Below, in pieces: positions 1,093 to 56,149 of a DNA stretch of 64,000 nucleotides (within the stretch, counting starts at the first letter, position 1; each line of letters begins with the position of its first letter). The notes under the pieces are model-generated. The model made no database searches. It was given only the letters and a program-made list of their open reading frames with translations, and was not told the origin of the DNA. Position numbers and translations under genes: made by a program. The DNA is from Orbicella franksi. Lineage: Eukaryota. The stretch lies in contig OZ116702.1 in the NCBI GenBank assembly GCA_964199315.1, forward strand, positions 9,858,001-9,922,000, read 5' to 3'.

Positions 1093-1172
1093 TTTATTCT
1101 ACATCACAGATGTACACATTTTCACAAACACCTCCATATTGTTTCACGATCGATTTCTTTGGAAGCGCCCAC
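1093..1172 (-). CDS. Candidate terminal exon (RGRFQRNRS*, stop 1144-1146) with AATAAA at 1093-1098
   Basis: Strong polypyrimidine acceptor tttttcccctttag, phase-1 compatible, polyA signal about 45 nt after the stop. Confidence 0.5.
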
Positions 1173-4100
1173 CTAAAGGGGAAAAATATAGAAAGTTTAA
1201 GTATTGTATGCTCGCAACTTTTTTGCTCACCATATATTTCATCTAACAATTGGTCTTTGTCTTCACCTATCCTTTCCCTTCCCCATACACAACACAGTGT
1301 CGATTTCTTTTCTATTCAACTTTGCCACAATATGTCAACATTAGTCTGGCGAAGGGGATTCGAAAATGGAATATTTAATTAACCATTCAAAAATATCTAT
1401 CTATGGGTGTTTTTAACACTACTTAGTGTAGTATCTTTATAACTTACGTGTGGGAAAACAGAACGCTTCAGTAAGCTTCTGGTTATCCAATAATCGTGTT
1501 AAGTCCTCAAATGACTCGACAAGGAAGAGATCATCTACTGGGTTCTGCACTATGGCCCTCAACTCGTCTTTATCGACATCATCACCGATACCAACAACAA
1601 TAACCTGTGAGAGTAACGTTTATTTAGCTCAGAGCTTGGGACCATTTGTTTCGTGCAACATAATATATAAATAAATGAGCTTTGTTCAACGAGGAGAGCA
1701 GTCTTACGAGTGACAAACACGTGGTAATCGGACAACGAGTCGACTTACACAGGGGTTTGGTCCATGAAGGGAAGAAACAGAGAACATTTATCACATCATA
1801 TCATAGAACGTTGGTGAAGGGCTGAGGAGAGGTGGGCAGATGGGGTGGAAATACACCAAAGTGGTTTAGATGGTTGTGTTTTCCTGGAAATACAAGCATA
1901 TGAATGATGAATAGGGCAGGTACAACCGTTATAGACTTATCCAACAGTATTCCCCTTATTCCCATTAAATCCATTAATCGAGGCAGACCCTTTGTCCTGT
2001 GTTTTTCGGAGGCTAAAAAGAACACGCTGAATTATAATTTTGTACATAACTACCTTAATGCTCTGATCACGCAACGGTCGCACGGCGTCCACCAACTCAA
2101 TCGCCCCAGGATCGTTTGATTGACGGCCATCAGTTATCAACAACAACACCTGAGGTACAAGGCTTTGACGTCCTTCGGGAAACAAGTTGTTGGCAGCCGT
2201 CTCTAGAGCGCTGTCTATGCGAGTGCGACCGCGAAAATATGGCACGCCATCCACTGCTGCAGTAAAGGAGAAAAGGTCGGTACTTCTAAGCGTGCCAAAT
2301 CTGATGGACATGATTGGTACATCGCTGAAAACAATAAGACCTAGTTGGACGTTTCGAGGCCCAACGGTGAGTTTACTGGCTAATCCCTTAATGAAATTCC
2401 TCTGTTTTTGGTAGTTGCCATCTCGTATGGAACCGGAGGAATCCATTGCGATGCCCAGGTCAAAGGCTTCGGCGCATGTAGAACCGGTTGGAGCGCCTGT
2501 TGTAAATGGAATGGTGGGTCCTGTGGAAACAACACAGTGGCACTTTATATAAGTATTATTTAGGACTAAGCTGCGGGATTCGCGTTTAAGAACCTAATAG
2601 AGAAGATACTCATGAAAAGGAAATTCTCAGGGTTTTTTTTTTCAGATGCACATTAGTAATGTCGAACAGTGTAATGCGTTCGTTACATTTTCGCACAAAC
2701 TGTGTGGTAAAACGCATTTCCGTACATTCGTTTGTTTTGTTTATTCGCATTAACAACCACCACTTACGTATGGTTTGCCGTCTGTGTGCGAATCAGGCCC
2801 AAAACAGAAATCTCTCGCCTAGCTGCTCATTTGCAATCAGAGTTGAGATTTGAAAACGCGCGATTACCGGCATGGCATGGGGACAGCAGTAGTACTCAGC
2901 TCCCAGTGGCATGGATACCTTTGTCCTTTCCCTTAGCCAGGAAAGTAAGGTTTACTTTTTCGGTCCAAACATCGCCTTAGAGTGTTCTTGAGCTCAAAGC
3001 ATTTTTCTGCAGGACTAAACGGCAACTTAAGCCTTGCTAAAGAGGTGGTAAGAGCAAGGGAAGGCTAAAGGCAGGCCCTTTCTTGTTGTTGTCATTAGGT
3101 GATAGCTGAAAGCTGAAACGACATTGATCGCATTGCCAATACTGGCTCTAACTGAGCAATAAGAAAAAACACCTCTTGGGGTATTTACATTTATACGACG
3201 AGAGTTTGTACTCGTATTGCCCTAATAACCAGATGTAGCCATAACAACTACAACAACAATAACAACGGTAGCAATTACCGGTTACTTCACCCACAGACGG
3301 TAGACATGTAAGCCGACAGCCGTCAAAACAGCAAAGGAAACCGGAGGAACACTGTTCGTCAGACAGGCAAGTGTGGTTGTAGGTAAAACAGGAGCCACCA
3401 GAAGGATCGGATATCTCTGGACACTGACCAATGGGACTAACCGTCGTTGATATTCCTGTAGCAAAAACACAATAGCTGCTTATTAAATGGTGTAGTTGTA
3501 TTCTGATAGCCGGTCATTCCTCCTCCCTTGCTGGGAATGGTCGGTTACAAAGGAAACAGTACTTTTACCTCTTTCCTATATTTAACTGCAATCCTCTCTA
3601 CAGGTTGTTTGGATAACCTTGACTATGAACAAGAAGAGCTCGCAATATGTTGCAATCTGCGCACACTACATTCATGTAGTTAGACCATATCCGACCGGTC
3701 TTGACACGTAGGTCTTTTCTCCTGTTTCTTTAGCAGTAACCACGGGGAGTATGCGTATTGCACCATTATAATGCTATATCGCGACATGGGACGCATAAGA
3801 CCTTCTGTCAAAGATATGGTTGCCATTGAAAGAGAAGGTTCTAAGTAAAATTAAATGCAGTGCCAAATCGTTTCCAATGAGTTCAATTCCAGATAGAGTC
3901 GCAGAGTTTGGCAAAAGTTATTGCCGGTTAAGGTCAGCGTGGGCACTTTCTGCACCACCCCCTCCCCGACCCAGTATGAATTAGAGTTAAGAGGGGATTC
4001 CTGACCTCGGGCTCTGATGTTTGCGTTCGACGCAAAATAAACTCGATAAGTAAATCGTGTGCCATCATTTGTGCCGAGAGACAAAAGAGCGAATTCTTTC

Positions 4101-4952
4101 ATATGCGCACTTCCTTCGGCATTCACTTTCTGCACTATGGCATTCTCACCTGACGGATAATAATGACTGCTTTGGAATTAAAATGAAAACTTTCTAGTTC
4201 ACAAATACAGCATAAACACCTGCTTCCACTCCAAAATAACTCAAGATGAGCCGAAACAATGGATGTGATTTAATTTTCAAATGCAAATAAAGAGGCAGTT
4301 GGCATAGCAATCTTCAAAACTAGCGAGTAATCACCATGTAAAAAGCAGGAGATGATTATTGTTACCGCGCATCTTTTACTAAGTAGGATGACTGGCAATT
4401 CACCTACAGTTGGAAATGTTGGTCATTGTAACAGTTGGAAATGAAAATTACGAATAAAGCTATTCAAAAATAACTTCCTTAAAAAACTGCAGGTATGAAT
4501 ATCTTGAAATGATACAGCAATCTCCTTCTAAAATGTACAAATTCTAAAATTGCTAATCTGTTAGACTTTAAAGAGAAAAATGACATTATCATAATCAACA
4601 ACAACGACAACAACACGATTTACAATAACAGCAACATCAACGGCAACGAAAGAGAGAACAGAAATATTAACAACAGTGGCAGAAAGTGCATCATTAACAT
4701 GAATAACAATAGCGTCAACAGCAACAACAACAACAACAAAACAGCGACAAAAAAAAAAAAGCAACAGCAGCAGCGGTAGTTCAGCGACAGCGAAGGTGGA
4801 ACAACAACCACCACAACAACAACAATAAACGGAAAAAAAGCAACAATAAAAACAGCGACCACAACATTAGCAACAACCGCAACAACAACAAAAGCACCAA
4901 TGATAAACTTTATCATCATCAGTCCTTGTCGCGTCATGGGACGCGTGAGATT

Positions 4953-4996
<44 letters not shown>

Positions 4997-5415: not shown

Positions 5416-5462
<47 letters not shown>

Positions 5463-8400
5463 AAACCTTTATTAACGTGTCTGGGGTATTTAGCATTGCT
5501 GCTAATTGGGGACACAATTAGCAGCAATGCTAATTGTGTCCCCTAACAATAAACTCACCTGGATTGACACATGCAGAAGCAGCCACATCACGACTAGCCT
5601 TTCTCAAGCCCTCGAATGATTGGACAGTAAAAACATATGAAGAATCTTTCGCAATCAAACGAAGTTCATACTGGGATATTTCAGGTCCGATTCCAACCAC
5701 CAACACACGCGCGCCCTGACGGTGAATAGGGTCGGCGGCGACATCGAGATCAACTGCATCTGGATCACGTGTTTGACGTCCATCAGTCATGACGATCACC
5801 ACACTCGGGAAGCCTGGTCTGTAAAGAATGATAAAAATAATGACAAAAATGTTTGTTCAAAGCTTTAAAATGTGCACAAAAATTCTCCCAAATCGTGGGA
5901 TAAAGTATAGAAACAAATAAATGCAGAAGAAACTTCCTGGGAGAATTTCCATTCATTTTCCGTTCATGTCGGGACAATTAGCGTTTCACTTGGGAACAAC
6001 AACCAATCCAAGATAGTAAACCGATGTCCAAAGTTCTTTTTCGTCGGCACAACTCTACGAGAAGTGTGGAATTTATTAGATGTACGTAGCAATGCCTTGT
6101 TTAGTCTTGTCTACATAAACTTACGAAATTAAGGTGGAAAACCGCACCTGGCCTGCTGTAGTACTCGAGAGGTCATAGTAAGCGCCTTGTCAATTCTCGT
6201 TCGCTTCTGAAGGTAGGGCAACTCGTCGACTGCCAACAGGAAGTTATCCAAGTTATTGTACTGGTCAAAAGTAATCTTCAGCTGCGTATCGTCGCTGTAG
6301 ATGATCACTGCTGCTCGACTTCCCGCTCCAACATTAAAAATGGAGGCGAGTCTCTTGACAAAGTTTTTCCCTTGCTGATACTGTGGCGCGTCGATACTCC
6401 GCGAAGAGTCCATCACGAAGACAATATCCAAAAGCTGGTCACACTTCGGGTCGGGTTCGCTAGGAGTCGTACTGACTGACGAATGTGTTGTGGAAGACTG
6501 CGTCGTTGGTATTGGTGAAGTTGTTCCGGTGGTTGGTTCTCTTGGTGTTGTGCTTGCAGTGGTTGCTTCTCTTGGTGTTGTGCCAATGAGACCTGGTGGT
6601 TCTTTTAAGTAATTGTATAAAACAATATCACTATGAATTCTAAGTTACGTGAATAAACGCTAATAGAGTCTACCTTTTAAGCGACGGATTACTGAAGGGG
6701 AAGAATGTCAGTAGCTCATTGGGAGATGATAGCTTATGTCACAGAATGTAGATGATTCTTGTTCAACTTCGTTTATTTGTTGATGGATTAGGAAAAAAGA
6801 GCTAACTGGATTATTCTAATTACAGAGTTAATATGAAAGGCATCGGCTTTCTGTTATATTATGTCATTAAATAGCTAATCGAGAGAATCAAGGGGAAGCC
6901 TAGGTTGCTGATAAATCCACGACGTTTCGTTTTTAGGTAAAGAACAAATGACACTGAAATCGCTTTTGGTATTGACCGTTGATTTTAACAATTTCACTAA
7001 AATCCTTGCAGAGGTATTGTTCCTTCATATTTAACCTTGGTTTTTTTTGTTTACTTACGTGGGCAGACGGCTTCCAGAAGCTTATCAGACTTGTCCAGTA
7101 ATTCCTGAAACGAGCTCATCTTGAAAACATCCTCCTGACTGGTAACCAATTCCTCCAACTCACTCCGGTTCACCCTGGGTCCCACGCCCACCGCGAGAAC
7201 GCGTACCCCCTTTGAACGCAGAGGTACCACAGCCTTACCAAGAGGCTCGACATTAGGTTCGGGTGTTTGCACCCCGTCGGTCATCACCACAGCAATCGAG
7301 ATCACAGAAGGACGCCGATTCAAAAACAGAGAATCCGCAGCATAGCGAAGGGCAAGATCTATCCTTGTCTTACTACGTCTGTGTGACAGGGCTTCCACCT
7401 CAGACTGAAAGGTGTCCAAGGAACTTTGACTTCTGAAGTCAATGCTTAGTTCTGGTCTACCGCTATACATGATGACACCAGCTCGGCTTTTTCGCGAGGC
7501 TTTTAAGAATTTTCGAGCTATCTCCTTCACGGCCTTCTTTTCCCGTTCAAAATCTTCGTCGGTGATACTTTCCGACGAGTCCATTAGGAAGGCAACGTCA
7601 ACCCCTTGGACGCATGACGGTTCTAGAAAAAAAATAAACATGAGAAAATGTAGACTAGTGAAATCAGGAATCCAGAGGGAATTCCAGTTATACATGTATT
7701 CATGTAGGTATTGTGACAGAGAAGAAAATAATCAACTAAAAACATTGCTTTTTGTTATCTCTAACAGAGTACTACCACAAGAATAATTATGGATTGCCCG
7801 TTTATCTAAACTACGGAAAAATGGGCAACCTGTGTACAGAACGTCAACTACATAGGAAAGGGTATAGGACGCTAAAGAAAGATTTAGCAATAATCTTGTC
7901 ACTGTCAAAGCGAAAGTCTTTTTTAATAACCAGCTTGGCACTTCTGACGAGCTGGCTTAAATCTGGAATGAGACGAGTCTGCCGTGCAGAGGTTGAACAG
8001 TTGTAGGGTTGCACGTTTTAGAACTTTCAAAAGTGGTCATTGCTGTAAGTCTTTGTTTATCAAATATGGGAGTGAGGCAGAATGAGAGCTGGCCTTTCAT
8101 TGACCCAATGATGCAATGATGTCAGAGCGCGGGCATTTCGCACATACTGGCCTTATATTTTTCAAAAAGCACAGCCTAATCCCCTAGCTCCAGTGCCTAC
8201 AATTTAACAGTACTATTTGTAGATTGTAAACAATTACTGGATGAGGTTTTTGTGATAACCCTTACCGAGACCTTGATTATTCTGAATGCCACAAAAACCG
8301 AATCTAATAATTATTTTATTATACATTGAACAGAAAAAAAACTGGAAGCCATGTTTGTGCTTCTTCACTGACGGCAAGCAACACAAAGCGCGCGACCTTG

Positions 8401-11400
8401 ACAAGAGTAACCTTAGAAGTCATGCAACGCGGTCATACATGACATGATTACCCGTGACCTTGAGTGTCCCTGACATGATTATTGTATAAGCTGCAGCTAG
8501 ATGACGTCACAGGCGCTGATTTCGAAACTTCACTGTATGCTTTCGGCCAATAAGAAAAAGAGATAGTGACTTCAACGTAAATAATGTAGGTAAAGAAATA
8601 AATTCGAGTGCAATTTGGATAAATAAGTAAATTATTCAAAGACTAAAAACAATCACGAGCCCATGGGGGGAGTGTGAAAAATATTTCAAATGTATTCCAA
8701 ATTGCGCGAGAAAAATCATTTGATTACTTGTATAACATGCATACAATTTTAAAATTCGTGTAGTCAATTTTAATTTTTATGCACTCAATTTTAACTTTAT
8801 GCACTGTTTGTATTAATTGACCTGCTCTCAGCCAATCACCATGCTAGAACTTTTGCATTTACATTGTTAAGATATGATTAACTGTGACTGTAAACCCTGT
8901 GTGCAACTTGACCTTGTCTGGGCCCTTTATTCGACTTAATCAAAGACCTCACCAGCTTACGCACCATTGTGCCAACTAAGATCTAGTTACGCCTACCAGC
9001 TTTCTTCCTGCACAACCGTCGACACCCGTCAAAGCAGCACTTGTAACCATCATCCTCATCGCAGTTAGAATCACATGTACATTCATCTTGAACTGAGCTT
9101 GGACATTTTTTATTTGGCGAATACGGTGGACACCTTCCTTTGAAGGGATCTTCAATTTAAAGAAGAGAACAGATATGATTTAATCTCGAAAATGTTGAAA
9201 ACTGAAAAACTTATGGAAGTGTTTCTCGTTGAGATTTTCCATAGTGCTTACTTACCAGGCGGTGGGGTGTAGTCGGTTGAGACGCAGATCTTCCCACAGC
9301 CGTTGTTACAGCATTTGAGGTCTCCACTGCAATCAGTATCATAGTTGCACTCTTTTGGTCGAGAAGAACATGACGATGGCCGTGGAAGGTAAGGACAAGA
9401 CCCTGCTTTATTAAGCTGCACCACTGTGCAAACGGAAAAAAGACAAAAGAAGAATTGATATATGGGAACGTTCTAACAAAGGGCTCCGCTCCACTGCACA
9501 GCATCAGTTTCTTTGCTCATTTTGGTAATGAGGAGAACAATGTCGCTAGATGAAAAGTTGGTCTTGTTTTCGAAAAGAGTGATTGGTTCTGATCTGACCG
9601 TGAAAACGTAAAAAGGTCGAAATAAGTAAAGTAGTAAAAAGTCACAGTGTGACAGTATTATAGGGAAACATTTCAGGAAGATAACTAAAGAGAAATCAAT
9701 TATTCATCAATTATTCGTCCGTCTGTCATTTTGTCTGTCTTTTTGCCTTTCTGTCTGTCTGTTCCTCTCTGTGTTCTTGTCTGCCCGGTTACGAACGCTT
9801 GTTTCTTCTGAGTATTTAGGAGATACTCAAAATAACGGAAGCGAATTAAACACCAAGAAATACATGTATTCACGTGATGTCCTCTGCTTGTCAGGGCCGT
9901 AGCCAGAAAAAGAAAACGTGACTGACGCAATCCCCACGACACATTTGAATAGTGCTCTTAGTTGTTTATCTTGGTCTAGCATCACTTAATCTGAGCGTAT
10001 GTTAGACACAAGCTTGTCCTCTTACTCTTTGTACAGGCCAAAAATCCACAAGAGTGTTTGCAGCACTTTTCATCCGCGGGGCACTGGCGGTCGTGTTCAC
10101 ACAGGTGATCGTTGGGACAGGGTGTGGTGTATTTTGTAGGACAAGCGCCAGGCTTTTTTGGTGTTGGTTTTGGCAGGGCTGAAAAATAAATAGCGGATAA
10201 TAAATCCAGATCATGAAGCTAAATATGATCTCTTGGATCTGATGCTGTCCTGGGCATTTCTCTAGGTTTAACCAAAGGATGGAGTAAGTGTGTTGGGACA
10301 AAACAGAAACAACAACGATAACATCAATAACAACAAACTGAAAAAGTAAACAAGCCAATCAACACAACAAACGGAACAATTTACCTCAAACGACAAATGA
10401 TTATTTCATTCATCTCGTTTAAACTAAGACCACACTAAAGTAGAAAGTTTAGTTTCTCGTAGATGGCATAAGGAGACGTATTGCGTGCAGAAATACGAAT
10501 TTAATAAAGGATTATTTTTTCAGTGGAACGTTGTGCCAGAGGCGTTTCATTGATTGTAAGGGTTCACAAGTGGCCAGATTTTGGAAACATTTTGTCTCGG
10601 ACTTGAGGCAAGGCTGATCTCAGAGTTCTCGACAATTTCATCTCTAAAAGAAGGCCCATATTCCTCCGATCACCAAAATGAGCAGATTCCTTGTCAATGA
10701 AACCATGTAACTGAAACGTTTACTTACATGTTGTTGTAGATAGTAGAGGTGTCGCAGCTGTGGTTATTGGTTCGGGGGTGGTTACAGCTCCGGTTGTGGC
10801 TGGTATGGTTGGTGTGGTAACATCCGTCATCACAGTGGTGGAAGGCTAAATGCAGCAAATAGACACTATGTTATTTTACATACCGGACTGATTCTATTTA
10901 GCTATTCTATTTAGTACATTGCGATCATCTGTTTTTCGTCGTCCTGAACTGTACATTCTTTTCCCATCACAAAAAAAAAGGTCTTTTAAGTATATCTGTT
11001 GATATTTTAAAGCGAGAGCACTATTTCCTTTACTAAACTGGGATCTCTGTTCCGGTTTACATAATCAGATGATCATATCAATAAGTGACTATTTTTCAGT
11101 TCCCAAAATAAAATAAGCTCTCCATCAAATCCCTGTGGCAGTCGAAAACAGGTAACTAAATATAAATTGCCTGTCAGAGATTTAGGCCCAGAATGTACCA
11201 TATCCGAAAAAGAAACTAAACACATGGCTAAAAGTAGTTTTCACTTCTTACCGTGTCCAAATTCGCAATTAACTAATCCGAGGCCTTGTTTAATGTCCTG
11301 ATATCGTGTGATATCAAGTGACAGACCTGATACGGACAGATGGCCAAATTCGGATACAGTGAATAAAAGTACTGAAATAAAAGTCATTGGTAGCGTATTT

Positions 11401-14400
11401 GCGTACACTGAATGTGGAAACTTCTTTTTCCGCAGTCTAAAAGAGAATGGGAAACAAAAGAAAAAAAAAACCGCTATATATATATTAAGAACAAAAACCA
11501 AAACAAACCTCTGTTGCCGTGGTTGCAGCAGTGGTAGATGGAACTGTCTCTGCGAAAAGGAGCACAAAATATAATCTTAGTCATCTGAACTACTTTCTTG
11601 GTTAGATATTTATCGACCTTCGACTATAATTACTGCATGTTTCTTTGTTACAACTTTGTATTTCTCAAATCTACGACTGGTTCACTATACTCTTGCAAAG
11701 TCTTTCCTCGATTGGTGCCGGTTGTTAGATGGGTAGGTAGGTATTCTTTATTTATCCACGGTTTCAATTCACATAACGTGCTCTTCCATCGAGCCGTGCA
11801 TACTTACCTAATTAAATTATCTAATGTAACTAAATTAATTATTTTCACAGAATTAGACTAAAAACTATTAAAAAACTATCCTATATAATCATTAGCTATA
11901 GTTAAATTTAATTCTAATTATATAAATGATTAAAAAAAAAAAAACTAAGAGTGGGCTGTATCTTAGCACTCAAAGGCAAACTGTTCCAGAGAACAGAATC
12001 GCGATATTGAAAACTCCTTTTGCCTGCTTCAGTATTCGGTCTAGGAACGAAAAGGTTACATTTTGAATTTCTTAGATTATGTGAGTGAACACTGGATGTA
12101 GACTTAAAAACACTATTCAAACTAGTCGGAGAAAGATCATGGAGAGCCTTAAACAGAATAATTGTGAGTTGCTTAGAACGCATTTTTAACCTGATGTCAT
12201 TTATACAGGGACCCTATGGATACCAGCCATGAGCTGAACGGGCTACCCTCTTTAAATAAAGTTTTACTTTTCTTTACTAACGCCTTCGCTCCAAAGAATC
12301 CCAGCCGAGGTCACCGTGTAAAGTGGAAGATCTTTTATTTAAGTCAGAGAAAGTAATTAAACGTGCAGCCCTATTTTGTAGTTTTTGGAGTCTCTCATAC
12401 TGACACACACCTTTTCGGCAGTGTCACGCATCGTATGAATTTTTTGCTACAACTTTTCGGCAGTGTTACGTATCGCATGAGTTTTTTGCGCATTCCTACT
12501 GAATTTGACACAAACCTATGCTGTCCCAGGCAGAGCTACACTAATCAAAGTATGGTTGGTATAGATCTTATAGATGACATAGCTCTTTCTATTGGGCTCC
12601 TTATGGTGCTCATACCCTTGTACATATTTTCCCTTTTTCGTACGGTCCTTTTCGACGCCCGAACACAAGGGGACAAATTAAATATGTCTCAAACTCACGT
12701 GCTAAAATGTTCGAAGCAATTGAAGGAACGTAGCTCATCACATCAGCAAACGCCTTCGGCGTGTACATGTCCTCAGGTCGAACAACCAGTCTTTGAAGGT
12801 TCGGAAAATCGGCCTCGTTTCCAACAGCTATGACGTACACAGCCTTGCCTTCCTGTCGAATGATACCGGCTAACGAATCAATGGGCCCTCTATTTGGCGG
12901 ATCTTTGTTGGTAATCACGATGATTATTTTAGGTACGTCGGGCCGATTAGTTGAGAAGCCTCTCGTAGCAAATGCTAGAGCGAAATCTAGTCGGCTGCTG
13001 GAACCGCCAAGGTACCGAAGATTGGTGACAGCTTCCGAAAAACTACCAAGTTCTCTATAACTTCCCATGCGAATCGGTGTTTCAAGGAAGGAATCAAATA
13101 TGATGACTGAAGATTGTGTATGATCGGGGCTGTGGTTTAACACGCGCGCCAAAGATTTGACAAAATCTTTCTCTGTCTGATAGTTGTCTAATCCAACAAA
13201 AGAGGACGAATCCACGACATAGATCACTTCAGCTTTGTAATCCTTTGGTGCACTAGTATCTAACAGGTAAGAAAGTAAAGCAACAATAACAGTCAATTAT
13301 TAAATGTTCGGCGCACTTGGCGTACTTGTTTTGTTTTTTGTTTTTTGTTTTTGCACTTGTTAAAATGGAAGTCTGCGTTCGTGACTCACTAGGCAGGCGC
13401 TTATTTCCCATTTCAGTTCCAAAAAGCAACCACGAGTATATGGCTTCCAATGGACGAGATGTAGTCCATCGCAAGGTTACCCCCGGCATTTCATTTGCCA
13501 CAACCCATTTAATAACCTTCGGTTGTCCAAAAGAAGGGTTAATGCAACAGTCATGTTAAATCGTCTAAAACGCAGTTTAAATTTTATCCGAAGGTTAGTT
13601 CTGTTGTTAGATTTGAATAATATAGCTACATGTAGGTGGGTTAAGGTGCTACTATCTTCGGGCTAAAATCAATCGAAATGGCGAGCTTGATGATTATGGA
13701 CCAGAGAGACGAGAAATAATGATAAAAAGGAAGTCACTGGAAAATCACGTCACTCAACCGTCGACATAACCATGCCTTGCTGATGGTGTTTTGTTGCTGC
13801 AAAATGGAGATTTTCCATTTCACTCGAACTTCTCATTGTTTTACTACGCGATTTATACCACGGGTTAAATATCATGCGGTCTAAATATCTAACCTCCAGT
13901 TAATCAACCCAACGTGAGTTTCACTAATTTTTCCGACACCTATGCTTTTTTGCACTGACCTTCAATCAGAATTAACCGGAGGTTAACTGAAGTCCTAATC
14001 GCATGATTGTAATTGGCTTACCAGTTCTGGAAACGACATAATACGCAATGGGTTGCACGTAGGAATTTAAGTCGCTTGAGGATGGAATCTCGAAAAAGTC
14101 ACTCCGTCTTTCCACAACCGGCTGCAACTGCGGATCATTATCATCGACATCTACACCAATGATATACAAGACAGCACGCATGTCCCTGACACTTTTTGCC
14201 ATCTCCCGAAGTCGCTGGGATCCAAGCTCGCGCGCCTGCTGTCCGTACGTTATAAGGAAGAGCACTCGAGGAACGTCGGGGCGCGCACTAGTAAGCAGTC
14301 GTTGTGTTTGCTGAAGAGCTTCCTGAATATTTCTCCTACCTCCAGTAAGGGTCACGGAGTCTACGATATCCTCAAAGCTTTTGCCCATAAGATAATCAAA

Positions 14401-17400
14401 AAATCCACCAATCAGTATTGGTTTGTCGCTGTAACTGATTACTGCAGCGTGTGAGGAACTAGGAGCAATGCCAAACTGTTTAGCCACGAGTTTCGCGAAG
14501 TCCTTCTGTTGTCTAAGGTCGCTTTGGGTGACACCGTTTGATGTGTCTAAAAGAAACACGATGTCCACTGAAGAAGGAGGTGTACCTGAAAATTGAAAAC
14601 AGTCGTACAATGGTATCGTAAAGTAACTGCAATGTGATCAAAAGGATTGCAAAACCGAGAGACACGAGGGCGTGATATGAGTAAGTTGGAGACCTAGTCA
14701 AGTGACTGCGGATCTGAGCCGCGGTCATTGTTCATGTTTGTGGTTTTGGACTAGACAGTTTATTACTTTCACAATGCCTTTAAACGCATCGTGACCCTGC
14801 AAAAGACTGGGGTTGTTTGCAACGGACTAGACATCCATTTAAAGGCAGTAGTGATACCTAAAGACTTCGTTATCAAAATGTAGATTTTACGGCTACTCAT
14901 CTTGACTACAGCTGCAAATTTTAGTGAGCTTATTGCAAACCTTATGTACAGCGTAGCTCTTCTACGGAGGATAACAAACCCTAACAATTAAATTCTGAAT
15001 TAATATGGCATCAGGCTGACAAAACGAAGAGAGTAAAATCAATATTCTATTGGCAATTAACACAATCTTCATCAACAACTTGCACACTAAAAACAGGTAA
15101 GTTTTGATAACGAAAATTATACATACCTGGACACTTCCTGGTATTGCATGCTCGGGATTGCTGTCTTGGTCCTTCGCAAGGCCTTCCGCCATATTGTGGT
15201 CTAGGATTATCGCATCTACGTTCTTGAGACTGTGTCCCCGACCCACACGTCTTAGTACATGTACTCCATGCACCCCACCGGCCCCAGCCGCCGTGCACTA
15301 AAAGCGAAGACTAAACGGTCACTGATCTCATGCTCTCTAAAGATACAGCGCAGAATTTCGACTACTGAGTACCTATTGTCTACTAGCTCCTATAAGTTAA
15401 ATTTATTATGAATATGGCAAGAAGCTAAAACATGGTTAATAATTCATTGCGCAAGGTGGACTTTGACTACCTTCTCTCTAAGAGACGAAGATGGATAACT
15501 ACGTTTGACATATATCAGGGGTAAACAATACCTCTGAAACCCACTTCGCGGGGATTTGAAGAGCGTCAAAGATACCAGCAACACGAATTAAAGGTACCTT
15601 TAACACAAAACAATCCACAGCACCTTTGTCACAGCTTGAACAAGCCATACCTGTTATCTTTGATCAAATTATGAGAGAAAAATGGCCTGATCTGGACACA
15701 GAGGTATGGCAAAGACGTATTTTACAACCTTTGAGTAAGATATGTGTCGTACGCGATTTTTCATACGGTGTAGATTAAAGTACTGGGGTTAAAATTGCAA
15801 ACTTATCAATAATTTATGAAGACATACCAGGACAACTTCTGGTATTGCAAGCACGGGACTGTAGTCGGGGTCCATTGCACGGCCTTCCGCCATTTTCTGG
15901 TGTGGGACTATCACATCTGCGTTCTTGAGTCTGCATCCCCGACCCACACGTCTTGGTACATTTCCTCCATCCGCCCCACGGGCCCCAGCCCCCGTGCACT
16001 GAAAGCGTAGTTTAACGGTAACTGATCTCATTTTCTATTTATGATAGTCGTATATGCTAATTTATATAGAGATCGAGTCCAGAATTTTGACGACTGAGTA
16101 CCTCTTGTACGGATGTTTAACTAGGCCTGTAGATCGTGTTTCATCTAAAACGTGTTTCAGGCCGGCAATCTTCTCTCTGTTTGCCGGCTGTGGGATGCTA
16201 CAAGGTTAGCTATGTGTTTGTTGCCTATTAACTGTTGTTCGATAACTTTAACTAAATTTTGGCTCCCCTTCGAGCAATTCCTTATAAATTAGTATTTACC
16301 AGCGGTAAAAGCCGAATACCTAACTTACGTGTGGGTTTCGTTCTGCAGATTTTAACTTTCGAGAACTCAAACTCATCATATACAATTGACCAGCTTTCCA
16401 TTTTTCCTGAAGGGTTCGAGTTAGTAGGATTGACAGTTTGCTTTAAAACACCAACCTTTTCTCCCAGTCAAATACTCATTGTACAACTGGATATATTACC
16501 TTTCACAGGAACAGTAGTTGTTTCCCTTGGTTCCGTTGTCGATGGTATTTCTGATGGAGTAGTTTCTTCTGCCGTCGTTGGGCTTGGTGTAGCAGTTTGA
16601 GGTTCCCGAGGGGCAACTGTTTGCGATAAAAAACATAGCTTAACGCTCCTCTTTATGGTCTTCTTTAATGGGAACCGAGAGAGATTAATGAAAGGAAAAC
16701 GAAAGGAGTCAAAACTTATCCTACTACTTTGTTTCACCTTCTCATAATCTTTTGTGCTTGCGTTTCTAGAACTGACATCATTAGACTGTGTTCTTACTCC
16801 AAGGAGACATCTTATGACGGCTTATTTGCTACATGTGATCTTCAAATGGTGACCTGGATTTCTTTTTCTTTCTAATGTTAGCTCTTACAACCTGCTGGCA
16901 ACTCAACTTCCAGCACATAGAAAAGAAGCTTCCGGAACATTGCAATTGGCATCTACGACCAACTGGTCACCTCTCAATATGCATAGCAAAAAATTCAAAC
17001 TAACGCGGAATAATAATAGCCTACCATAGTCAACCAGAAGGTCAGTCGAGAGCCTTTCCGCCCCTTGTGCCAGATCAAGGAAGGAAGGAACAGATATAAC
17101 ACTGGATTTGTTTTTACCGTCCCCTTGGAAGTAACTGGGATCAACCTTGTCTCCAACTGCCATTACGTGAATTTTCGTTCCAGTACGATGGAGCGGTTTT
17201 ACAGCAGCACTAAATGTTTGTGAACCTGGTTCATCGGTTTGTCGACCTGCAGCTACCAATACGACAAACTTTGGATGATCAACATCGATGTCCCTCAGGG
17301 CGTCCGTTGCCGCCTTCAAAGCTCTGTCGATTCGCCTGGCACCTCTCAAATGGGGAAGGTTGTCGATGATCGTCTCTAGACTGGACTTGCTTTCCTGGTT

Positions 17401-20400
17401 TTGGAAATCTAAGACCATTGTCGGGCCATCACTGTAAACCATAATACCGACTCGAGAACCGCTGTCGGCTGGATAAATGTTCAGTTGGCTGATTAAGGAT
17501 TTTATGAATTCTTTTTCTAGTCCAAAGTTGGAAGGCGTCACCTCAGCGGACGAATCGATGACGAACAAGACGTACATCGTGAGATTGAACTCGTATGACC
17601 TCACTGAGGAAAAATTTCAAGGAAGTTTATTTAAAAACAGTCACTTTAACAAGCAGCAGCTAAACAAAAACTAACGTAGCTGGTCTACTAATTACGAAAA
17701 CGTTTTCGATTAACATGTGTCAGGGTAGGGGTGATGCTATTAAGAAGCTGTGAGCCATTCACTTGGATCGTTTTGCTTTACCGCACTCTCTCATTAAAGG
17801 TGGAATTTAGCTTACCAGAGTCCGTCAACACCTGACTTCCGATCTGATTGATCTGCTCTGGAATATCGCTGCGTGAAGGTATGGAAAACACGTTTTCTGG
17901 ATTTTCCAAACTGGAACTAAAGTCTGGAATGCTAGGAGATGGGCCAATCAGAGCAACGTACGTCCTCACACCTAGGGCGTATAGCCTGTTAAGGACGTCA
18001 CCAAATGAATTCCAATCCTCGTTTTGCAGTGGCTTCCCAGATGTCACAAGGAAAACAACTTTGGAAACAGAAGACGGGGACTTGGGAAACATCCCTGCAG
18101 CAGTTCTCAAAGCCTCACTGACACTCCTGTCTCCTCCATAGTGAGGAACGTTATCAACGACGGATTCGAAGGCAGAAGCTGATCTGAAGCTTTCAAAGTC
18201 GGAGATTACCACAGGCCGGCCGTTGAATACAATGAGAGCTGCCCTGGTTCCCTGGGGGTCGATGTTAAGGTATCTTGCAAGGGATTTGATGAGGTCTTTT
18301 TCCGTGTTATACGTGGAAGCCGTCTCGCTGGACGAATCCATCACAAATATAACGTTGGCCGAGTACTTGGCTTCGGGATCTTGTGGAAAGATGTTCATAT
18401 GTTTATGTCATTGAGAGTTTAAAGCACGCACTCTGATATTAATGAGTTTAAGGTTACTAAGCATTCCTAATGCATCAAATGAGACGAAACAAAAAATGAA
18501 AATGAGCTACAAGGTCTAAACAGTGTATGTGCCTGAAAACTAAGACGTTTGACGCATTGTTCTGAAATAACTAATAAAGCGAAGATCCCAGTTTCGGAAC
18601 AAGTGAAGGGAACCTTCTTACGTAGATTTACCGTTACCTTCACATATTCCAGTTCGGATCCGCGGTGCAATGGTCCGTAGTGCCCTGAATGAAGACGATG
18701 TAAACACGTACTCAGAATCCGACGCAATCTCTTCTAGCTCATTCCTGTCCACTCCGTTTCCAACTCCAATAGCGTACACTGTAGCGCCCGTGTTCTTGAT
18801 ACCTTCTGACGCTACAACAAGGCTGGTGTATACACCAGTTTTAGTTTGCTTCCCATCTGTGATGACAATTGCTATCTGTAAACAAGAAATTGAAAATTGT
18901 CTTAGTATCCTCTCAAAAGCGCGGAGAGCTTTTAAAAACCTACTTCAGGATGTAGGTAGGGTTAGTTCGTTAGAGCCAGAATTAGTCAGTTAGTGTCAGA
19001 TATAGAATTCTCTGCTTGCAAGTATTGAAAAATGAACAAAACCTTCGTCTTTTTGAAACTTGTAACAAGATGGTTATGACTGATATAAAACAAGCTAGGC
19101 TCTGCATATTTACCCGCTTAAACAACATTTAACAATCATTGAATGCATTAACCCACTATATAGGCCATATAATTTCTTAGCTGCAAATAACTTTACCTTC
19201 GCTACATTTGGTCTCATGCCGTTTGAAGTCTGAAACAGGTCTCTGTCTGCAAGCTGGAGGGCTTTGTCCGTGTAAGTAAAACCACGCTGCCAAAGCATTC
19301 CATCAAACAATCTATTCACCTCGTCCGTATCCTGCGCGTCCGTGAACCTCATCACAACCACAGGATTGGTGCTGTATGCTACAGCTGCTACATGCGTAGC
19401 TGATGGGCTGACATCAAGTTTGCTGACCAATGCTTTAATGAATCGTTTCATTCTTTCCCAATTCGTGCGCCCAATAGATCCAGATGAATCGATGATAAAA
19501 GCAATATCCACGAGGGGACTGCAATCCGCATCTGTTTTGATTGTCAAAATGAGAAATCATAACAAGTAATGTACAGTATGTGGTCCAGTATGTGATTCAA
19601 CATTATCCGACCAGTTCTTATTGCTTTTCTTTTTTAAATATAAATTCAAATTTTTATTTCGTGTTTTCTCTTTTGTAAAAAAAAATATTACTGAACGAAG
19701 CCCAACATTTCAGCCTCCCAAAAACAAAAAAGAAATGTCAGCGGGCAATCACCTTGGGGAACACTTGCAAATTAAACGACTCTGTTTTGCTCAAGCGAGT
19801 GACATTTTCATGGCTTATAATTGCATGATTTCATCTATCTGATGTTGCTCATTGAAAGAACAATGGATTTCAAATTGAAACGGTTGAAAATTAAAAAAAC
19901 GCTTATTATTAGTAAAATAACCTTGTTCACGGTTAAGAATTACGTGTACCGCCCCCCCCCTCCCCACCCACCGAAAAAGGAGGGAAGAAAACAAAAACGC
20001 AGAGGACAAAACTGTAACCAGAAATAAAATAATCCATGCGGCACGGATTTGTCAAGAATCTAACTTTGCAATCAAAGTAAGGATCGACCTACCACAAGGG
20101 CCCCGCTTCGCAGTAAAAACAACCATATCCCCTTGACAAGCTTGTCGTCTCAGATGACACTCGCTCAGATCTTGTACGTCATCTGATGCACAAACAGGCC
20201 TTGATATGTTGGGACAAGTAGGACAGATACATTGGGCTTGATTGTCCACCACACGACATCCGACATTGTATGGAGCACGACAGCCCAGGGTCTCACAACG
20301 ATCTGCAACAAATGAAATACGAAATTATATTTGAATGATTATGTGCTGCACAACTGCATAAAAGAAATTCCAGTACAATAATTTTTGATAACACAACAAA

Positions 20401-23400
20401 CTACGTCTTGTTGTAAAATACCAGGAGTGACTGGTGTTGTGGTTGGTGCTTGTGTCTTTGTTACTTTCGTTGTTGGTGTTGAATCTGTGAATAAAGACAA
20501 CGACACACGCAAAATATTAAACCTAGCATTCAAGCGCTGAGTATTCGCAATATCAGAATGATAAAGCGTTAAAGGATTACGTCGGAGATGACGAATATGA
20601 ACATTCTTAGCCTAAATTTATCAAGTTCTTTGCCCTTAATAAGTTTTTGGATCTTCCCAGAATGCACCATCCTCGTTCCTTTCAGCTATAATACGTGTTA
20701 TTTGATTTACTTTACGTCTTTAATGCTGTTCTGCCTTATAACCCCTTCAGTTTGAGATTTCCTTTGATTAGCCTACAATAACATGCTTAGCAGCTTGCGG
20801 TTTCTACGACTGGCACACAAGAAAAATGAGAGCAAAAATCGAATTTTTGGGTGGACGAATTTAAATTATTTTTCTACATTGTAAAGTATCATTATATGGT
20901 TATTATATGGCTTGTGTTTGTAGTCGATATAACGCGCGCGCTGATTAGCTATAGCAGGGCATTATTTAGCTCTTATTAACCGAGCTTAGTCGGTCTGTAT
21001 GGGAGAATCTTGACCGAGGTCATGAGTTCAGACCGAACGTAGGCAGGTCTGTACTCACGACCGAAGAAAACCAGAAAACTTTATACTTCTTAAGGTGGCC
21101 GAACACAGTTTTCAAGTGCCTGTGCCTAATTCACCATTACTTTTAAACTATTTATGCTTTGGCACCCGTTTTTCTGCAAGAGTCAAGGTTAACCTCAGAA
21201 GGGTTTATTCTTACATTTTTGCTAAGGTGTGTGCTGTTGCCATGGCAACGGGGCTGGTTAAAAAAACAAGGCTTAAAAATGGTTTTTGTTTATTCAAAAA
21301 AAATCCAGTCGATAGATTTTTTTAATAATTTGCCCACTACGAACTGACATTAAATCCCTTCCGTCAACACTGTTCTAATAAAATTTTGACACAGACGATT
21401 TTCGTAATTCGTCGTAAATCGTTTTCACTGCATGTTCTGTATTATTAAAACTTCCCTATGCTATAATTCAGATTTTTTGTGATAGATCATTCACGTGGTT
21501 TCTGAACTGTTTTTTTTTGCCAAATTTCTTGAAAATAGTAGTGCGCGCAAGAGGCACGTCACAATTCAAAGGACGCTGAAATTTATATTAAGACCGTTGG
21601 GCTGAACGGTTCCTAGCCGGAAAATAATCTTCATTTCACGCTGCTTCCATTGGTTGGTTCCACCGCATAATGCCACACCACGCACCTGTACATTACAAAT
21701 ACTATGGCCCGTGGAGTTTTCTGAACACTGAAGAAGGGTTATGGACCCGAAACGTCTGTTTCTTCAAAGACTTTTATGACACTGTTTGATAATTTGTTAA
21801 AATATCAACCTATAAGCTATGTAACTGCAAGTGTCACGTATCTTTGGCAGTTTTTCCGTTCACCACTCATTTCAAAATGATCTACCGGTTTATAATATGC
21901 GAGAAGCCAGGCCAATCACATTGTAGCATTAACATTACAACACTGGTATACGTATCTCTCAAAAATCGACTTCGTGCATTTTTACCTTGACAAAATCGCC
22001 TTGTTATCCTTGGAGCGATGTTCTGGAGATCTCTAAATGACGATGATGTGATTACGTACTCTGACCCAGATGCGATCTCCTCCAACTCTGCTTTATCGGC
22101 TCCACTTCCAACTCCAAGAGCATACACCGTAACGCCTTTATTTTTCATTCCTAGTGAAGCTACTGAAAGTCTCGTGTAAGGTAGTGTTGTTGTCTGTTTC
22201 CCATCTGTGATTACAATGGCCAACTACACAAACATCACGAAAAGTTCTGATTGTCAAAAATCCCAACTTAGAGAAAATAACAATGATTTACACGACACGT
22301 CCCAAGTTCTTTAAGTTCTTATTCTATACGAAAATGAAGGAACATTTATGCAGAAGGTAATACCATCACTCAAGATGTTTGAATACCGATAGTCACATTT
22401 TTAAGAATAAAAATGATGAGCGAAATTTTGATTTTGGATTTCCACTCAGATAGGAAACCTACTTACTTTGGGCACATTGGATCTCATTCCGTTGGACAAC
22501 TGAAATAGATCACTGTCTGCAAGAAGGAGTGCTTTGTCTATGTAAGTGAAGCCACGCTGATAACGCATCCTGTCAAGCAACTGATTAACCTGGTTTGCAC
22601 CCTGAATACCATTAAACCTCATGACTACCTCAGGACTGTTACTGTATGCTATAGCTGCTATGTGGGTGGCGGATGGGCTGACGTCAAGTCTGCTAACCAA
22701 TGCTTTCAGAAATCGTTTCATTCTTTCCCAATTGGTGCGACCAATAGATCCAGATGAATCAACAACAAAAGCGATATCCATAACGGTGCGACATTCTTTA
22801 TCTGATAAAAATGGGAAACAAAATAATGAATGTTTTCATTTCATGTTTAATTTCTTGGAAGGCATATAGAAACTTATTTTCGAACTTACAAATGTATGAT
22901 ATATTGCTATTTAAAAAGAGTCAAGAATACAGTCGAACCTCCGGTTACGACCACCTCGAACTCTCGTACGCCACCACCTCTCGTCAGCGACCAGTTTTCC
23001 AAAACACCAAACGTTTTCAAGTCAAATCACCATACTTGGAACCTCTTGTCAACGACCACCTCTCGTAAGCGACCGCGACCACTTTTAAAGTTAAAAGTTT
23101 GAAATTTTCTTTTGTTTTTAACCTCCCGTAAAGGACCACTTGGCAGATAATAGAGCGGAAATTGAATAATATTGTTGTAACATTATCGCATTCTTGAATA
23201 GTAGAAGAGACGGAAATTTCTGAACGAAAAGTGTTGTATTTTTTCTCGAAATCGACTTTCACATGAATAACACATTTAAAATATGGGGTAAGTCTCTGCA
23301 GTTACCATATTCTAATGAGGGAAAAATTTGACCCAATATGGTCTAAGCTCTCGTATACGACCACTTAGGCTTGGCATTTTGGGTGGTCGCTTATACGGGG

Positions 23401-56149: not shown

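What the first reader, a model, noticed from the sequence alone, without database searches (positions are those of the whole stretch)
1144..56149. A ~6,000-aa secreted VWA-follistatin-WAP-TSP1 'bead chain' protein, apparently complete in the window
Seen: a signal peptide plus about 69 in-frame exons encoding 24 VWA, 9 ten-Cys follistatin, 6 WAP and 2 TSP1 domains joined by Thr/Pro mucin-like linkers, with no Gly-X-Y helix and no TM or GPI tail. Established: VWA domains bind matrix through MIDAS, WAP and Kazal folds are protease-inhibitor scaffolds, and VWA, TSP1 and WAP proteins occur in invertebrate skeletal organic matrices and adhesives. Inference: this combination is not one I recognise. 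Pipelines would probably fragment it or call it collagen VI/XII-like. It may be a self-protecting adhesive, mesoglea or biomineral scaffold protein.
Basis: partly seen in the sequence, partly recalled or inferred. Interest (0 to 1): 0.9.

Follow-up and report, generated by a model that had tools for sequence, protein, structure and literature searches.

The report
Giant secreted multi-VWA coral matrix gene
The window holds one very large coral gene (68 exons, about 6,000 amino acids) for a secreted extracellular-matrix protein built from common adhesion modules; the gene is real, but it is an enlarged variant of a protein type already listed in sea anemones.

Summary
On the minus strand, from the ATG at 56149 to the stop ending at 1144, I rebuilt a 68-exon model. 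It has a 17,982-nt coding sequence, 5,993 aa, all GT-AG introns and one stop. It encodes a signal peptide, 24 VWA, 9 ten-Cys follistatin, 6 WAP and 2 TSP1 domains, plus Thr/Pro linkers. There is no Gly-X-Y run, no membrane segment and no GPI-like tail.

The assembly gap (36635-36762) lies inside a predicted intron between the two halves of one VWA domain, so its length cannot change the frame. No read bridging it was listed, and hidden whole modules cannot be excluded.

RNA from the same coral confirms twelve exon junctions exactly as modelled. These junctions put WAP, VWA and TSP1 exons in one spliced transcript, and follistatin and VWA exons in another read set. Transcript contigs fit the model from follistatin domain 9 to the polyA region. 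The 5' half (exons 1-12) has little junction support. It rests on frame, on read depth over exons 10-12, and on colinear orthologues in other corals.

The nearest described relatives are the Nematostella mesoglea protein NvvWFA-WAP and the WAP/vWFA part of Hydra collagen Hcol3. The most likely role is a multivalent, glycosylated matrix cross-linker, and this is inferred. The scan also noted a second giant VWA/follistatin/WAP mosaic elsewhere in this genome. Interest is moderate.

The parts
56196..56202 (-). TATA-like box (TATAAAG), 52 nt upstream of the ATG
   Evidence: Read directly from the sequence. An in-frame stop lies between it and the ATG. Promoter function is inferred.
56083..56149 (-). 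Exon 1: start codon and signal peptide (aa 1-23), ending in a phase-1 donor
   Evidence: It is one of the two most hydrophobic 19-residue windows in the protein and the only one at the N-terminus. No RNA junction was tested.
54287..54472 (-). Exon 2: WAP domain 1
   Evidence: Pfam WAP, 33.4 bits. A WAP1 homologue sits at the same relative position in another coral.
53321..53506 (-). Exon 3: WAP domain 2 (weak splice scores)
   Evidence: Pfam WAP, 27.1 bits. The order WAP2 then VWA1 is kept in three relatives.
41605..51548 (-). Exons 4-10: VWA1 to VWA7, one exon each. Coordinates: 51548-50976, 50207-49632, 49058-48480, 47986-47414, 46818-46249, 45504-44932, 42171-41605.
   Evidence: Pfam VWA on VWA1 and VWA5. 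All are phase 1-1. RNA depth covers exon 10. The order is colinear in relatives. VWA2-7 have a degenerate MIDAS site.
38991..40070 (-). Exons 11-12: VWA8, split by a phase-0 intron (40070-39742 and 39213-38991)
   Evidence: RNA depth lies on both exons and not on the intron, apart from a repeat near 38770-38875.
36297..38336 (-). Module 1: linker 38336-38292, follistatin 38196-37987, VWA9 N-half 37501-37167, VWA9 C-half 36534-36297
   Evidence: Spliced reads join 38292 to 38196 and 37987 to 37501. Pfam Kazal_2 and VWA.
36635..36762 (.). Assembly gap (N run) inside the intron between the two halves of VWA9
   Evidence: Both flanking exons are intact and complementary. The bridging splice was not observed.
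29628..35848 (-). Modules 2-4 (exons 17-28), older copies 73-83% identical at nucleotide level
   Evidence: The acceptor at 32033 scores poorly (-3.6) and is placed by homology to the other modules.
21986..29513 (-). Modules 5-8 (exons 29-45): the young or homogenised core, 86-97% identical by exon type (follistatin and VWA N-half exons 94-97%)
   Evidence: Identity matrices for the follistatin, VWA N-half and VWA C-half exons. The first repeated 31-mer of the mRNA lies just upstream, in exon 28 of module 4.
27526..27772 (-). Partial tandem duplication: an extra linker exon (27754-27710) with intact splice sites, plus a frame-broken stub of a follistatin exon
   Evidence: 86% identity to 27499-27253 with 4 gaps. 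Whether the extra 45-nt exon is included is untested. Either way the frame is kept.
18632..20484 (-). Module 9 (exons 46-49): linker, follistatin 9, and VWA17 in two exons
   Evidence: Transcript contigs start 65 nt before the end of the follistatin 9 exon, which is where the model mRNA becomes unique.
17025..18379 (-). Exons 50-51: VWA18 and VWA19, which lack a MIDAS site
   Evidence: Pfam VWA. Their summed length fits the contig offset of 2,075 nt.
16500..16616 (-). Exon 52: Thr/Pro/Glu-rich linker
   Evidence: Loose read ends beyond 15998 match 16502 onwards, so 16500 is joined to 15998.
15127..15998 (-). Exons 53-54: the two TSP1 repeats (15998-15828 and 15297-15127)
   Evidence: Pfam TSP_1, 47.3 and 52.2 bits. 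Spliced reads and contigs join 15828 to 15297 and 15127 to 14585. These repeats are absent from the orthologue of one relative.
12699..14585 (-). Exons 55-56: VWA20 and VWA21
   Evidence: The junction 14022 to 13259 is seen in reads and in three runs' contigs. Pfam VWA.
10728..11549 (-). Exons 57-58: mucin-like linker in two exons (11549-11509 and 10845-10728), joined by a phase-0 intron
   Evidence: Predicted, then confirmed by the junctions 12699 to 11549, 11509 to 10845 and 10728 to 10178.
8997..10178 (-). Exons 59-61: WAP3, WAP4 and WAP5
   Evidence: Pfam WAP, 39.4, 46.0 and 25.4 bits. The join 10026 to 9423 is shown by loose ends.
7059..7622 (-). Exon 62: VWA22 with a complete MIDAS site
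   Evidence: The relative's orthologue is 76% identical.
5559..6601 (-). Exons 63-64: a 46-residue Thr/Ser/Pro stretch, then VWA23, split by the only phase-2 intron
   Evidence: The exact acceptor at 6601 is uncertain (score -0.5).
3279..3455 (-). Exon 65: WAP6
   Evidence: Pfam WAP, 31.4 bits. A homologue is present in the relative.
1448..2520 (-). Exons 66-67: VWA24 (2520-2054 and 1604-1448)
   Evidence: Pfam VWA covers profile positions 1-139 on the first exon. The second exon supplies the remainder by alignment but gave no Pfam hit on its own.
446..1172 (-). Exon 68: the last 9 codons, the TGA stop (1146-1144) and the 3' UTR. AATAAA signals lie at 1098, 840 and 475.
   Evidence: The length of the 6,752-nt transcript contig places its end near 504, just before the signal at 475. 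This is inference.

Best explanation
This is a single protein-coding gene of a stony coral. It spans about 55.7 kb on the minus strand, with 68 exons and at least 5,993 codons. The product is secreted and non-collagenous.

Domain order: signal peptide, 2 WAP, 8 VWA, nine repeats of (Thr/Pro linker - follistatin - VWA), 2 VWA, linker, 2 TSP1, 2 VWA, mucin-like linker, 3 WAP, VWA, mucin-like stretch, VWA, WAP, VWA, short basic tail.

Almost every domain is one phase 1-1 exon, or two exons split by a phase-0 intron. Modules can therefore be duplicated, inserted or skipped without breaking the frame, and the locus shows this has happened. Four of the nine modules are 86-97% identical, depending on the exon type. 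There is one partial duplication. One relative lacks the TSP1 pair and WAP3 but has six extra VWA units.

Most likely mode of action (inferred, not shown): a long, flexible, O-glycosylated matrix cross-linker. Thirteen VWA domains keep a complete metal-ion-dependent adhesion site and would bind collagens or other matrix ligands multivalently. Eleven have lost the site and would act as spacers or self-association units. The agrin-type follistatin, WAP and TSP1 units would add glycosaminoglycan or growth-factor binding, or possibly protease-shielding surfaces. The mesoglea or basal matrix is the most probable location.
For: Shown:
- The open frame is uninterrupted across 68 GT-AG exons.
- Pfam domain calls score above the curated cut-offs.
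- Twelve exon junctions are confirmed by polyA RNA reads and transcript contigs from four runs. They include TSP1-TSP1-VWA-VWA-linker-linker-WAP-WAP in one chain and linker-follistatin-VWA.
- RNA depth is confined to the predicted exons.
- Transcript contigs of 3,683 and 6,752 nt start 7 nt after the last repeated 31-mer of the model mRNA. The longer one ends just upstream of an AATAAA signal.
- There is only one signal-peptide-like start. There is no membrane segment, no Gly-X-Y run and no GPI-like tail.
- A colinear orthologous locus runs from WAP1 to VWA24 over about 69 kb on one strand of a 3.46-Mb contig from another coral. A second relative matches over the part fetched.
- The MIDAS site is complete in VWA1, VWA9-17 and VWA22-24.

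By analogy:
- Nematostella NvvWFA-WAP (NV2.11346) is classed as core matrisome, scored as a hit in the paper's proteomics comparison, and listed as a gastrodermal marker (PMC12549020).
- The nearest solved VWA sequences are collagen VI alpha-3 and the collagen-binding mussel thread protein PTMP1.
Against: - No read or contig was examined for exons 1-9 or for most module-to-module junctions. For these, continuity rests on frame, conservation and the absence of alternative first exons.
- The splice across the assembly gap was not seen.
- Read depth is about 3-5 times lower at 36-42 kb than at 10-16 kb. This fits the 3' bias of polyA libraries on an 18-kb mRNA, but it would also fit separately expressed units.
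- No protein-level, localisation or binding data exist for this gene.
- Orthology to the Nematostella protein was not tested.
Confidence: 0.72

Rival explanations
1. The locus is two or more adjacent tandem genes with the same phase-1 exon design. For example, a 5' gene (signal peptide, WAP, VWA1-6 or VWA1-8) and a 3' gene. They would only look like one reading frame because all the exons are symmetrical.
For: Phase 1-1 exons are in frame whether or not they are spliced together. The longest introns (2,760 nt between VWA6 and VWA7; 1,534 nt between VWA7 and VWA8) were not bridged by any read examined. Depth differs between the middle and the 3' third.
Against: A scan of all 37 kb of introns for ATG-led hydrophobic first exons with a phase-1 donor gave 3 candidates at 2 start sites. 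One start site lies in an intron shown to be spliced out; the other lies in an intron covered only by the contig-length inference. Nothing is conserved between species in the VWA6-VWA7 interval. The same order and strand are kept over the whole length in a relative at 50-80% protein identity. RNA depth is present on VWA7, VWA8 and module 1 alike, and the linker-follistatin-VWA9 junctions are confirmed.
Confidence: 0.1
2. It is one gene, but the full 5,993-aa form is rare. Cassette skipping of the symmetrical exons would produce a family of shorter isoforms with variable numbers of follistatin-VWA modules.
For: 54 of 67 introns are phase 1, so any run of whole modules can be skipped in frame. 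An extra 45-nt linker exon with good splice sites sits next to a dead follistatin stub.
Against: Every junction listed in the two stretches examined joins neighbouring exons, and no skipping junction reached the listing threshold. The repeated core, where skipping is most likely, was not examined. Short reads map ambiguously there.
Confidence: 0.2
3. Its main role is as a polyvalent protease inhibitor or 'self-protecting' scaffold, acting through its 9 Kazal-containing and 6 WAP units.
For: Kazal_2 and WAP profiles match. Octocoral sclerite matrices contain Kazal-repeat plus WAP proteins (PMC7533068). Adult Nematostella mesoglea is enriched in protease inhibitors (PMC12549020).
Against: The follistatin units score far better against agrin and follistatin than against true Kazal inhibitors: 120 and 49 bits versus 25 bits. 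The Kazal 'T-Y-x-N' core is replaced by 'Q-D-L-S' in eight of the nine copies (Q-E-L-S in one). The residue at the presumed P1 position is Asn (the P1 assignment comes from my own knowledge). Inhibitory activity cannot be read from sequence.
Confidence: 0.12
4. It is a component of the skeletal organic matrix, or of tissue-to-skeleton anchoring, rather than of the mesoglea.
For: VWA, TSP1 ('coadhesin') and VWA-only proteins recur in coral skeletal proteomes (PMC7853314 and PMC7533068). The host is a coral.
Against: No skeletal proteome entry with this architecture was found in the papers read. The protein has no acidic or low-complexity mineral-binding region apart from the Thr/Pro linkers.
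Confidence: 0.15

Closest known systems
[quoted passage not shown]
   Same: A cnidarian, secreted, non-collagenous protein with extensive WAP and vWFA repeats. It is classed as a core-matrisome ECM glycoprotein in a cnidarian-specific orthogroup, and its automatic name is collagen alpha-6(VI) (PMC12549020).
   Different: That paper reports no follistatin-VWA module array and no TSP1 pair for it.
Hydra fibrillar collagen Hcol3 (N-terminal alternating WAP and vWFA domains)
   Same: WAP and VWA domains alternate in a cnidarian matrix protein (cited in PMC12549020).
   Different: Hcol3 has a collagen triple helix and an NC1 domain. This protein has no Gly-X-Y run of four or more triplets.
Vertebrate collagen VI alpha-3 (N-terminal array of VWA domains, C-terminal Kunitz unit)
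   Same: It is the best solved-structure sequence match for VWA1: 175 bits summed over its VWA domains. It has a long tandem VWA array, many domains without a functional MIDAS site, and an inhibitor-fold module appended.
   Different: This protein has no triple helix and no FN3 or Kunitz domain. Its domain number, exon design and follistatin/WAP/TSP1 content all differ.
Mussel proximal thread matrix protein 1 (PTMP1)
   Same: It is the second-best solved match to VWA1. It is a secreted invertebrate protein of tandem VWA domains. From my own knowledge, it binds collagen in a load-bearing matrix.
   Different: PTMP1 has two VWA domains and nothing else.
Agrin and follistatin (follistatin modules)
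   Same: Same ten-Cys follistatin module. Profile match: 120 bits to agrin and 49 bits to follistatin. Long library hits to the follistatin profile were agrins.
   Different: This protein has no NtA, laminin-EGF or laminin-G domains. Its follistatin units alternate with VWA domains.
A second giant mosaic noted by the scan in this genome (s1-234098: thyroglobulin-1, VWA, follistatin-Kazal, WAP)
   Same: Same genome, and the same kit of VWA, follistatin and WAP units in a protein of more than 7,000 aa (an unchecked note).
   Different: That mosaic is dominated by 49 thyroglobulin-1 repeats, which are absent here. It sits at a different locus.

Membership tests
Collagens with VWA domains (VI, XII, XIV and similar) | At least one Gly-X-Y triple-helical segment | tested here: not met
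   No run of four or more G-x-x triplets in 5,993 aa.
VWA domain superfamily (PF00092) | Profile match above the curated cut-off | tested here: met
   Every VWA exon submitted scored 37.7-114.6 bits against a cut-off of 23.8, except the short C-terminal exon of VWA24, which gave no hit on its own. 24 domains align.
VWA domain superfamily (PF00092) | Complete MIDAS site (D-x-S-x-S, Thr, Asp) | tested here: inconclusive
   Complete in 13 of 24 (VWA1, VWA9-17, VWA22-24) and degenerate in VWA2-8 and VWA18-21. Metal and ligand binding were not tested.
Follistatin module (FOLN plus Kazal) | Ten Cys with follistatin-type spacing, and a profile match to Kazal, follistatin or agrin | tested here: met
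   All nine copies have the pattern. Kazal_2 scores 30.2 bits. The profile matches agrin and follistatin in the PDB.
Kazal-type serine protease inhibitors | A canonical reactive-site loop with a protease-matched P1 residue, and demonstrated inhibition | not testable with these tools
   The presumed P1 residue is Asn and the T-Y-x-N core is replaced. Activity needs an assay.
WAP four-disulfide core (PF00095) | Eight Cys and a profile match above the cut-off | tested here: met
   Six domains score 25.4-46.0 bits against a cut-off of 20.8.
Thrombospondin type 1 repeat (PF00090) | W-x-x-W and C-x-x-[ST]-C-G motifs, and a profile match above the cut-off | tested here: met
   Two repeats score 47.3 and 52.2 bits. 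Both motifs are present.
Cnidarian WAP/vWFA-repeat matrix glycoproteins (NvvWFA-WAP type) | Secreted, repeated WAP and vWFA domains, no collagen helix or NC1 domain | tested here: met
   Signal peptide, 6 WAP, 24 VWA and no Gly-X-Y run.
Cnidarian WAP/vWFA-repeat matrix glycoproteins (NvvWFA-WAP type) | Sequence orthology to NV2.11346, and presence in mesoglea | not tested
   The Nematostella sequence could not be fetched, and there are no proteome data for this coral.
Agrin | NtA domain, laminin-EGF and three laminin-G domains next to the follistatin repeats | tested here: not met
   All 68 exons are accounted for as signal peptide, WAP, VWA, follistatin, TSP1, linker or tail. True agrins in the library carry these domains.
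WFIKKN (WAP, follistatin/Kazal, Ig, Kunitz, NTR) | Ig, two Kunitz and NTR domains after the WAP and follistatin units | tested here: not met
   No exon is left unassigned that could encode them.

The most novel reading that the evidence does not exclude
The follistatin-VWA array might be a coral-lineage invention. It would couple collagen binding, through the 13 MIDAS-bearing VWA domains, with capture of TGF-beta/BMP-type ligands or glycosaminoglycans, through the agrin-type follistatin units, on one 6,000-aa glycosylated thread. Its rapidly changing module number between species would then tune matrix signalling or tissue-to-skeleton anchoring. In that case the locus would be a natural example of ongoing exon shuffling acting on a functional trait.
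Probability: 0.12. Interest if true: 0.7.

Novelty: new variant of a known kind. Interest (0 to 1): 0.38.

Why it matters
The result gives a checked, near-complete model for one of the largest matrix genes in a reef-building coral, in a form that annotation pipelines usually break up or misname.

The locus is also a clear case of evolution by symmetrical-exon shuffling. It shows a recently amplified four-exon module, a half-finished duplication, and gain or loss of TSP1, WAP and VWA exons between related corals.

For coral biology, it is a candidate structural component of the mesoglea or the tissue-skeleton interface, and it can now be searched for in proteomes and cell atlases. It does not open a new class of mechanism.

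Tried and rejected
1. A simple exon-chaining program trained only on VWA exons skipped the WAP, follistatin and TSP1 exons and invented frame-compensating boundaries. I corrected it by phase analysis and paralogue comparison. RNA later confirmed the corrected boundaries in the stretch tested.

2. A profile of the nine follistatin units searched against 1.84 billion proteins found multi-Kazal proteins, agrins and single-exon ORF fragments from genomic contigs. It found no spliced full-length relative.

3. A search for PacBio runs holding the locus listed none.

4. The metagenome scan returned only unspliced genomic contigs. These were useful for conservation but not for splicing.

5. A protein search with the VWA7 exon returned only naive ORFs with no source names. 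One hit (P0155) looked like a longer product. It is an allele in which the intron reads through, colinear with 42043-41030.

6. A signal-peptide exon could not be recognised by similarity in the relative. The one 6-residue match is not an exon.

8. Two of the four raw-read RNA runs held no reads from this locus.

Full report
**What is in the sequence**

Long open stretches of about 190-240 codons recur on the minus strand between 1.9 kb and 51.6 kb. Pfam assigns representative pieces to VWA, WAP, Kazal_2 and TSP_1, all above the curated cut-offs. A second batch confirmed the remaining three WAP units, the second TSP1 repeat and further VWA exons.

A ten-Cys pattern with follistatin spacing occurs exactly nine times. 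The nine copies align without gaps at 86% mean column identity. As a profile they hit agrin (120 bits) and follistatin (49 bits) among solved structures, and true Kazal inhibitors only weakly.

**Gene model**

It is followed by a strong phase-1 donor and preceded by an in-frame stop and a TATAAAG box 52 nt upstream. That segment is reached from the second exon of the last VWA domain through a phase-1 intron.

A first exon-chaining pass was biased toward VWA exons. Enumerating phase 1-1 exons then showed a regular design:
- follistatin unit: one 210-nt exon
- Thr/Pro linker: one exon of 36-63 nt
- VWA domain: either one exon of about 570 nt, or 335 + 238 nt split by a phase-0 intron
- TSP1 repeat: 171 nt
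- WAP domain: 153-186 nt

After manual correction the model has 68 exons and 17,982 coding nt. It gives 5,993 aa with a single terminal stop, and every intron is GT-AG. The intron phases are 54 phase 1, 12 phase 0 and 1 phase 2. No further good phase 1-1 exon hides in any intron over 500 nt.

The protein has no Gly-X-Y run. Its only N-terminal hydrophobic segment is the signal peptide, and no other 19-residue window exceeds a Kyte-Doolittle mean of 1.54. The C-terminus is hydrophilic and there are ten Thr/Pro-rich segments.

**The assembly gap**

The N run at 36635-36762 falls in the predicted intron 37166-36535. The exon before it (37501-37167) ends in phase 0 at a good donor. The exon after it (36534-36297) starts at a good acceptor. 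Together they form a complete VWA domain colinear with the other eight modules. The frame therefore does not depend on the gap's true length.

RNA reads cover both flanking exons and leave the interval empty, but a bridging junction did not reach the 3-read listing threshold.

This module is one of the old, divergent copies, about 75% identical to the others. Collapse of near-identical repeats is therefore not the obvious cause of the gap. Even so, whole hidden modules of 828 nt would stay in frame and cannot be excluded, so the protein length is a minimum.

**Transcript evidence**

The host is a coral.

In polyA RNA reads of run X23, depth over 36250-42249 lies on the predicted exons only, apart from a repeat near 38770-38875. 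Spliced reads join 38292 to 38196 and 37987 to 37501, which is linker to follistatin 1 to VWA9.

Over 10020-16019, reads from X23 and transcript contigs from three other runs show six junctions: 15828-15297, 15127-14585, 14022-13259, 12699-11549, 11509-10845 and 10728-10178. Two of these involve small linker exons that I had predicted only one call earlier. Loose ends match 9394-9423 and 16502 onward, which adds 10026-9423 and 16500-15998. TSP1, VWA and WAP exons therefore sit in one spliced chain.

Contigs of 3,683 nt (X12) and 6,752 nt (X13) share a start 2,075 nt upstream of 15297 in transcript coordinates. In my model that point is 7 nt after the last 31-mer that is repeated anywhere in the mRNA, inside the follistatin 9 exon. 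A k=31 assembly is expected to break exactly there, so the exon lengths from follistatin 9 to TSP1 must be right in sum.

The longer contig would end near window position 504, just before the AATAAA at 475. These two points are inferences from lengths, because I could not see the contigs outside the 6-kb stretch.

**What remains untested at RNA level**

Exons 1-9 and most junctions inside the repeated core were not examined. Supporting evidence for them:
- A scan of all introns for ATG-led hydrophobic first exons with a phase-1 donor found 3 candidates at 2 start sites. One start site lies in an intron shown to be spliced out; the other lies in an intron covered by the contig inference.
- The largest intron (VWA6 to VWA7, 2,760 nt) holds nothing conserved between species.
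- The orthologous loci described next are colinear.

**Relatives**

A metagenome contig 98.8% identical to 56728-43443 is unspliced DNA of the same species.

Contigs at about 72% protein identity keep the order WAP2, VWA1, VWA2, with a much shorter intron.

On a 305-kb contig and a 3.46-Mb contig of other corals, the order VWA3 through VWA8 followed by follistatin-VWA modules is kept. I walked the 3.46-Mb contig in 10-kb steps. This gave about 69 kb colinear with the whole gene, from WAP1 to VWA24, on one strand at 50-80% identity.

That orthologue differs in informative ways:
- It has seven follistatin-VWA modules.
- It has five tandem copies of a divergent VWA-only unit (about 40% identity), plus one more extra VWA near the 3' end.
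- It has no TSP1 repeats and no WAP3.

Within the window, modules 5-8 are 86-97% identical by exon type (94-97% for the follistatin and VWA N-half exons), while modules 1-4 and 9 are about 63-83%. A 247-nt partial duplication has left an extra linker exon and a broken follistatin stub. The locus is thus conserved as a unit, but its interior evolves by duplication and insertion of symmetrical exons.

**How it probably works**

Thirteen VWA domains (VWA1, VWA9-17, VWA22-24) keep D-x-S-x-S, the Thr and the T-D-G Asp of the metal-ion-dependent adhesion site, and most are bracketed by Cys. The eleven others (VWA2-8, VWA18-21) have lost it.

The closest solved sequences are collagen VI alpha-3 and mussel PTMP1.

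The literature holds a close precedent. [quoted passage not shown] It is classed as core matrisome, scored as a hit in the proteomics comparison, listed as a gastrodermal marker, and automatically named collagen alpha-6(VI). The study also cites Hydra Hcol3, which has alternating WAP and vWFA domains (PMC12549020).

I therefore read the coral protein as a secreted, O-glycosylated, multivalent matrix cross-linker, most likely of the mesoglea. This step is inference.

A protease-inhibitor role is possible but not favoured: the follistatin units resemble the binding modules of agrin and follistatin more than true Kazal inhibitors. A skeletal-matrix role has no specific support in the papers read.

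**Novelty**

No protein with this exact architecture was found in the library searches or the papers read. The kind, however, is known: giant cnidarian mosaics of VWA with WAP and related modules. The scan itself noted a second such mosaic in this genome (unchecked). I rate it a new variant of a known kind, of moderate interest.

Noticed in passing
window 62469-63998 (+): An open frame of 510 codons running off the window end encodes a BTB-BACK-Kelch protein (Pfam BACK 74.8 bits, BTB 52.8 bits, Kelch motifs). It lies about 6.3 kb beyond the giant gene's start, on the opposite strand.
   Followed up: partly
window 38770-38875: A short repeat inside the intron between VWA8 and module 1 attracts many RNA reads. 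They show several sequence variants, loose ends on both sides and 'opposite strands' joints. It looks like a dispersed inverted-repeat element transcribed elsewhere.
   Followed up: no
window 11620-12450: Part of the 1,149-nt intron between exons 56 and 57 is covered by reads and high-depth contigs (up to 111x) with loose ends, which suggests a dispersed repeat. The 99-codon open frame at 11917-12213 has no Pfam match.
   Followed up: partly
window 21723-21761: An earlier scan note proposed a Penelope-type minimal hammerhead ribozyme here, in the 1.5-kb intron before module 9. Rfam found nothing, either at gathering score over the whole window or at E up to 1 over 21600-21900. Minimal hammerheads can escape such models.
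   Followed up: partly
window about 4560-5050: Low-complexity, strongly A/T-skewed tract in the 2.1-kb intron before WAP6. It gives poly-Val, poly-Gln and poly-Asn reading frames on the two strands.
   Followed up: no
window 41030-42043: A Logan-derived ORF (P0155, 338 aa) is colinear with VWA7 and runs on through the following intron at 98% identity. At least one allele therefore lacks the intronic stop codons seen in the window. It is unspliced sequence, not an isoform.
   Followed up: yes
L008-L010 (relative's contig, merged coordinates 32139-40179): The orthologous gene of another coral carries five tandem copies, period about 1.83 kb, of a split VWA unit without a follistatin partner. It is only about 40% identical to any VWA in this window.
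   Followed up: partly
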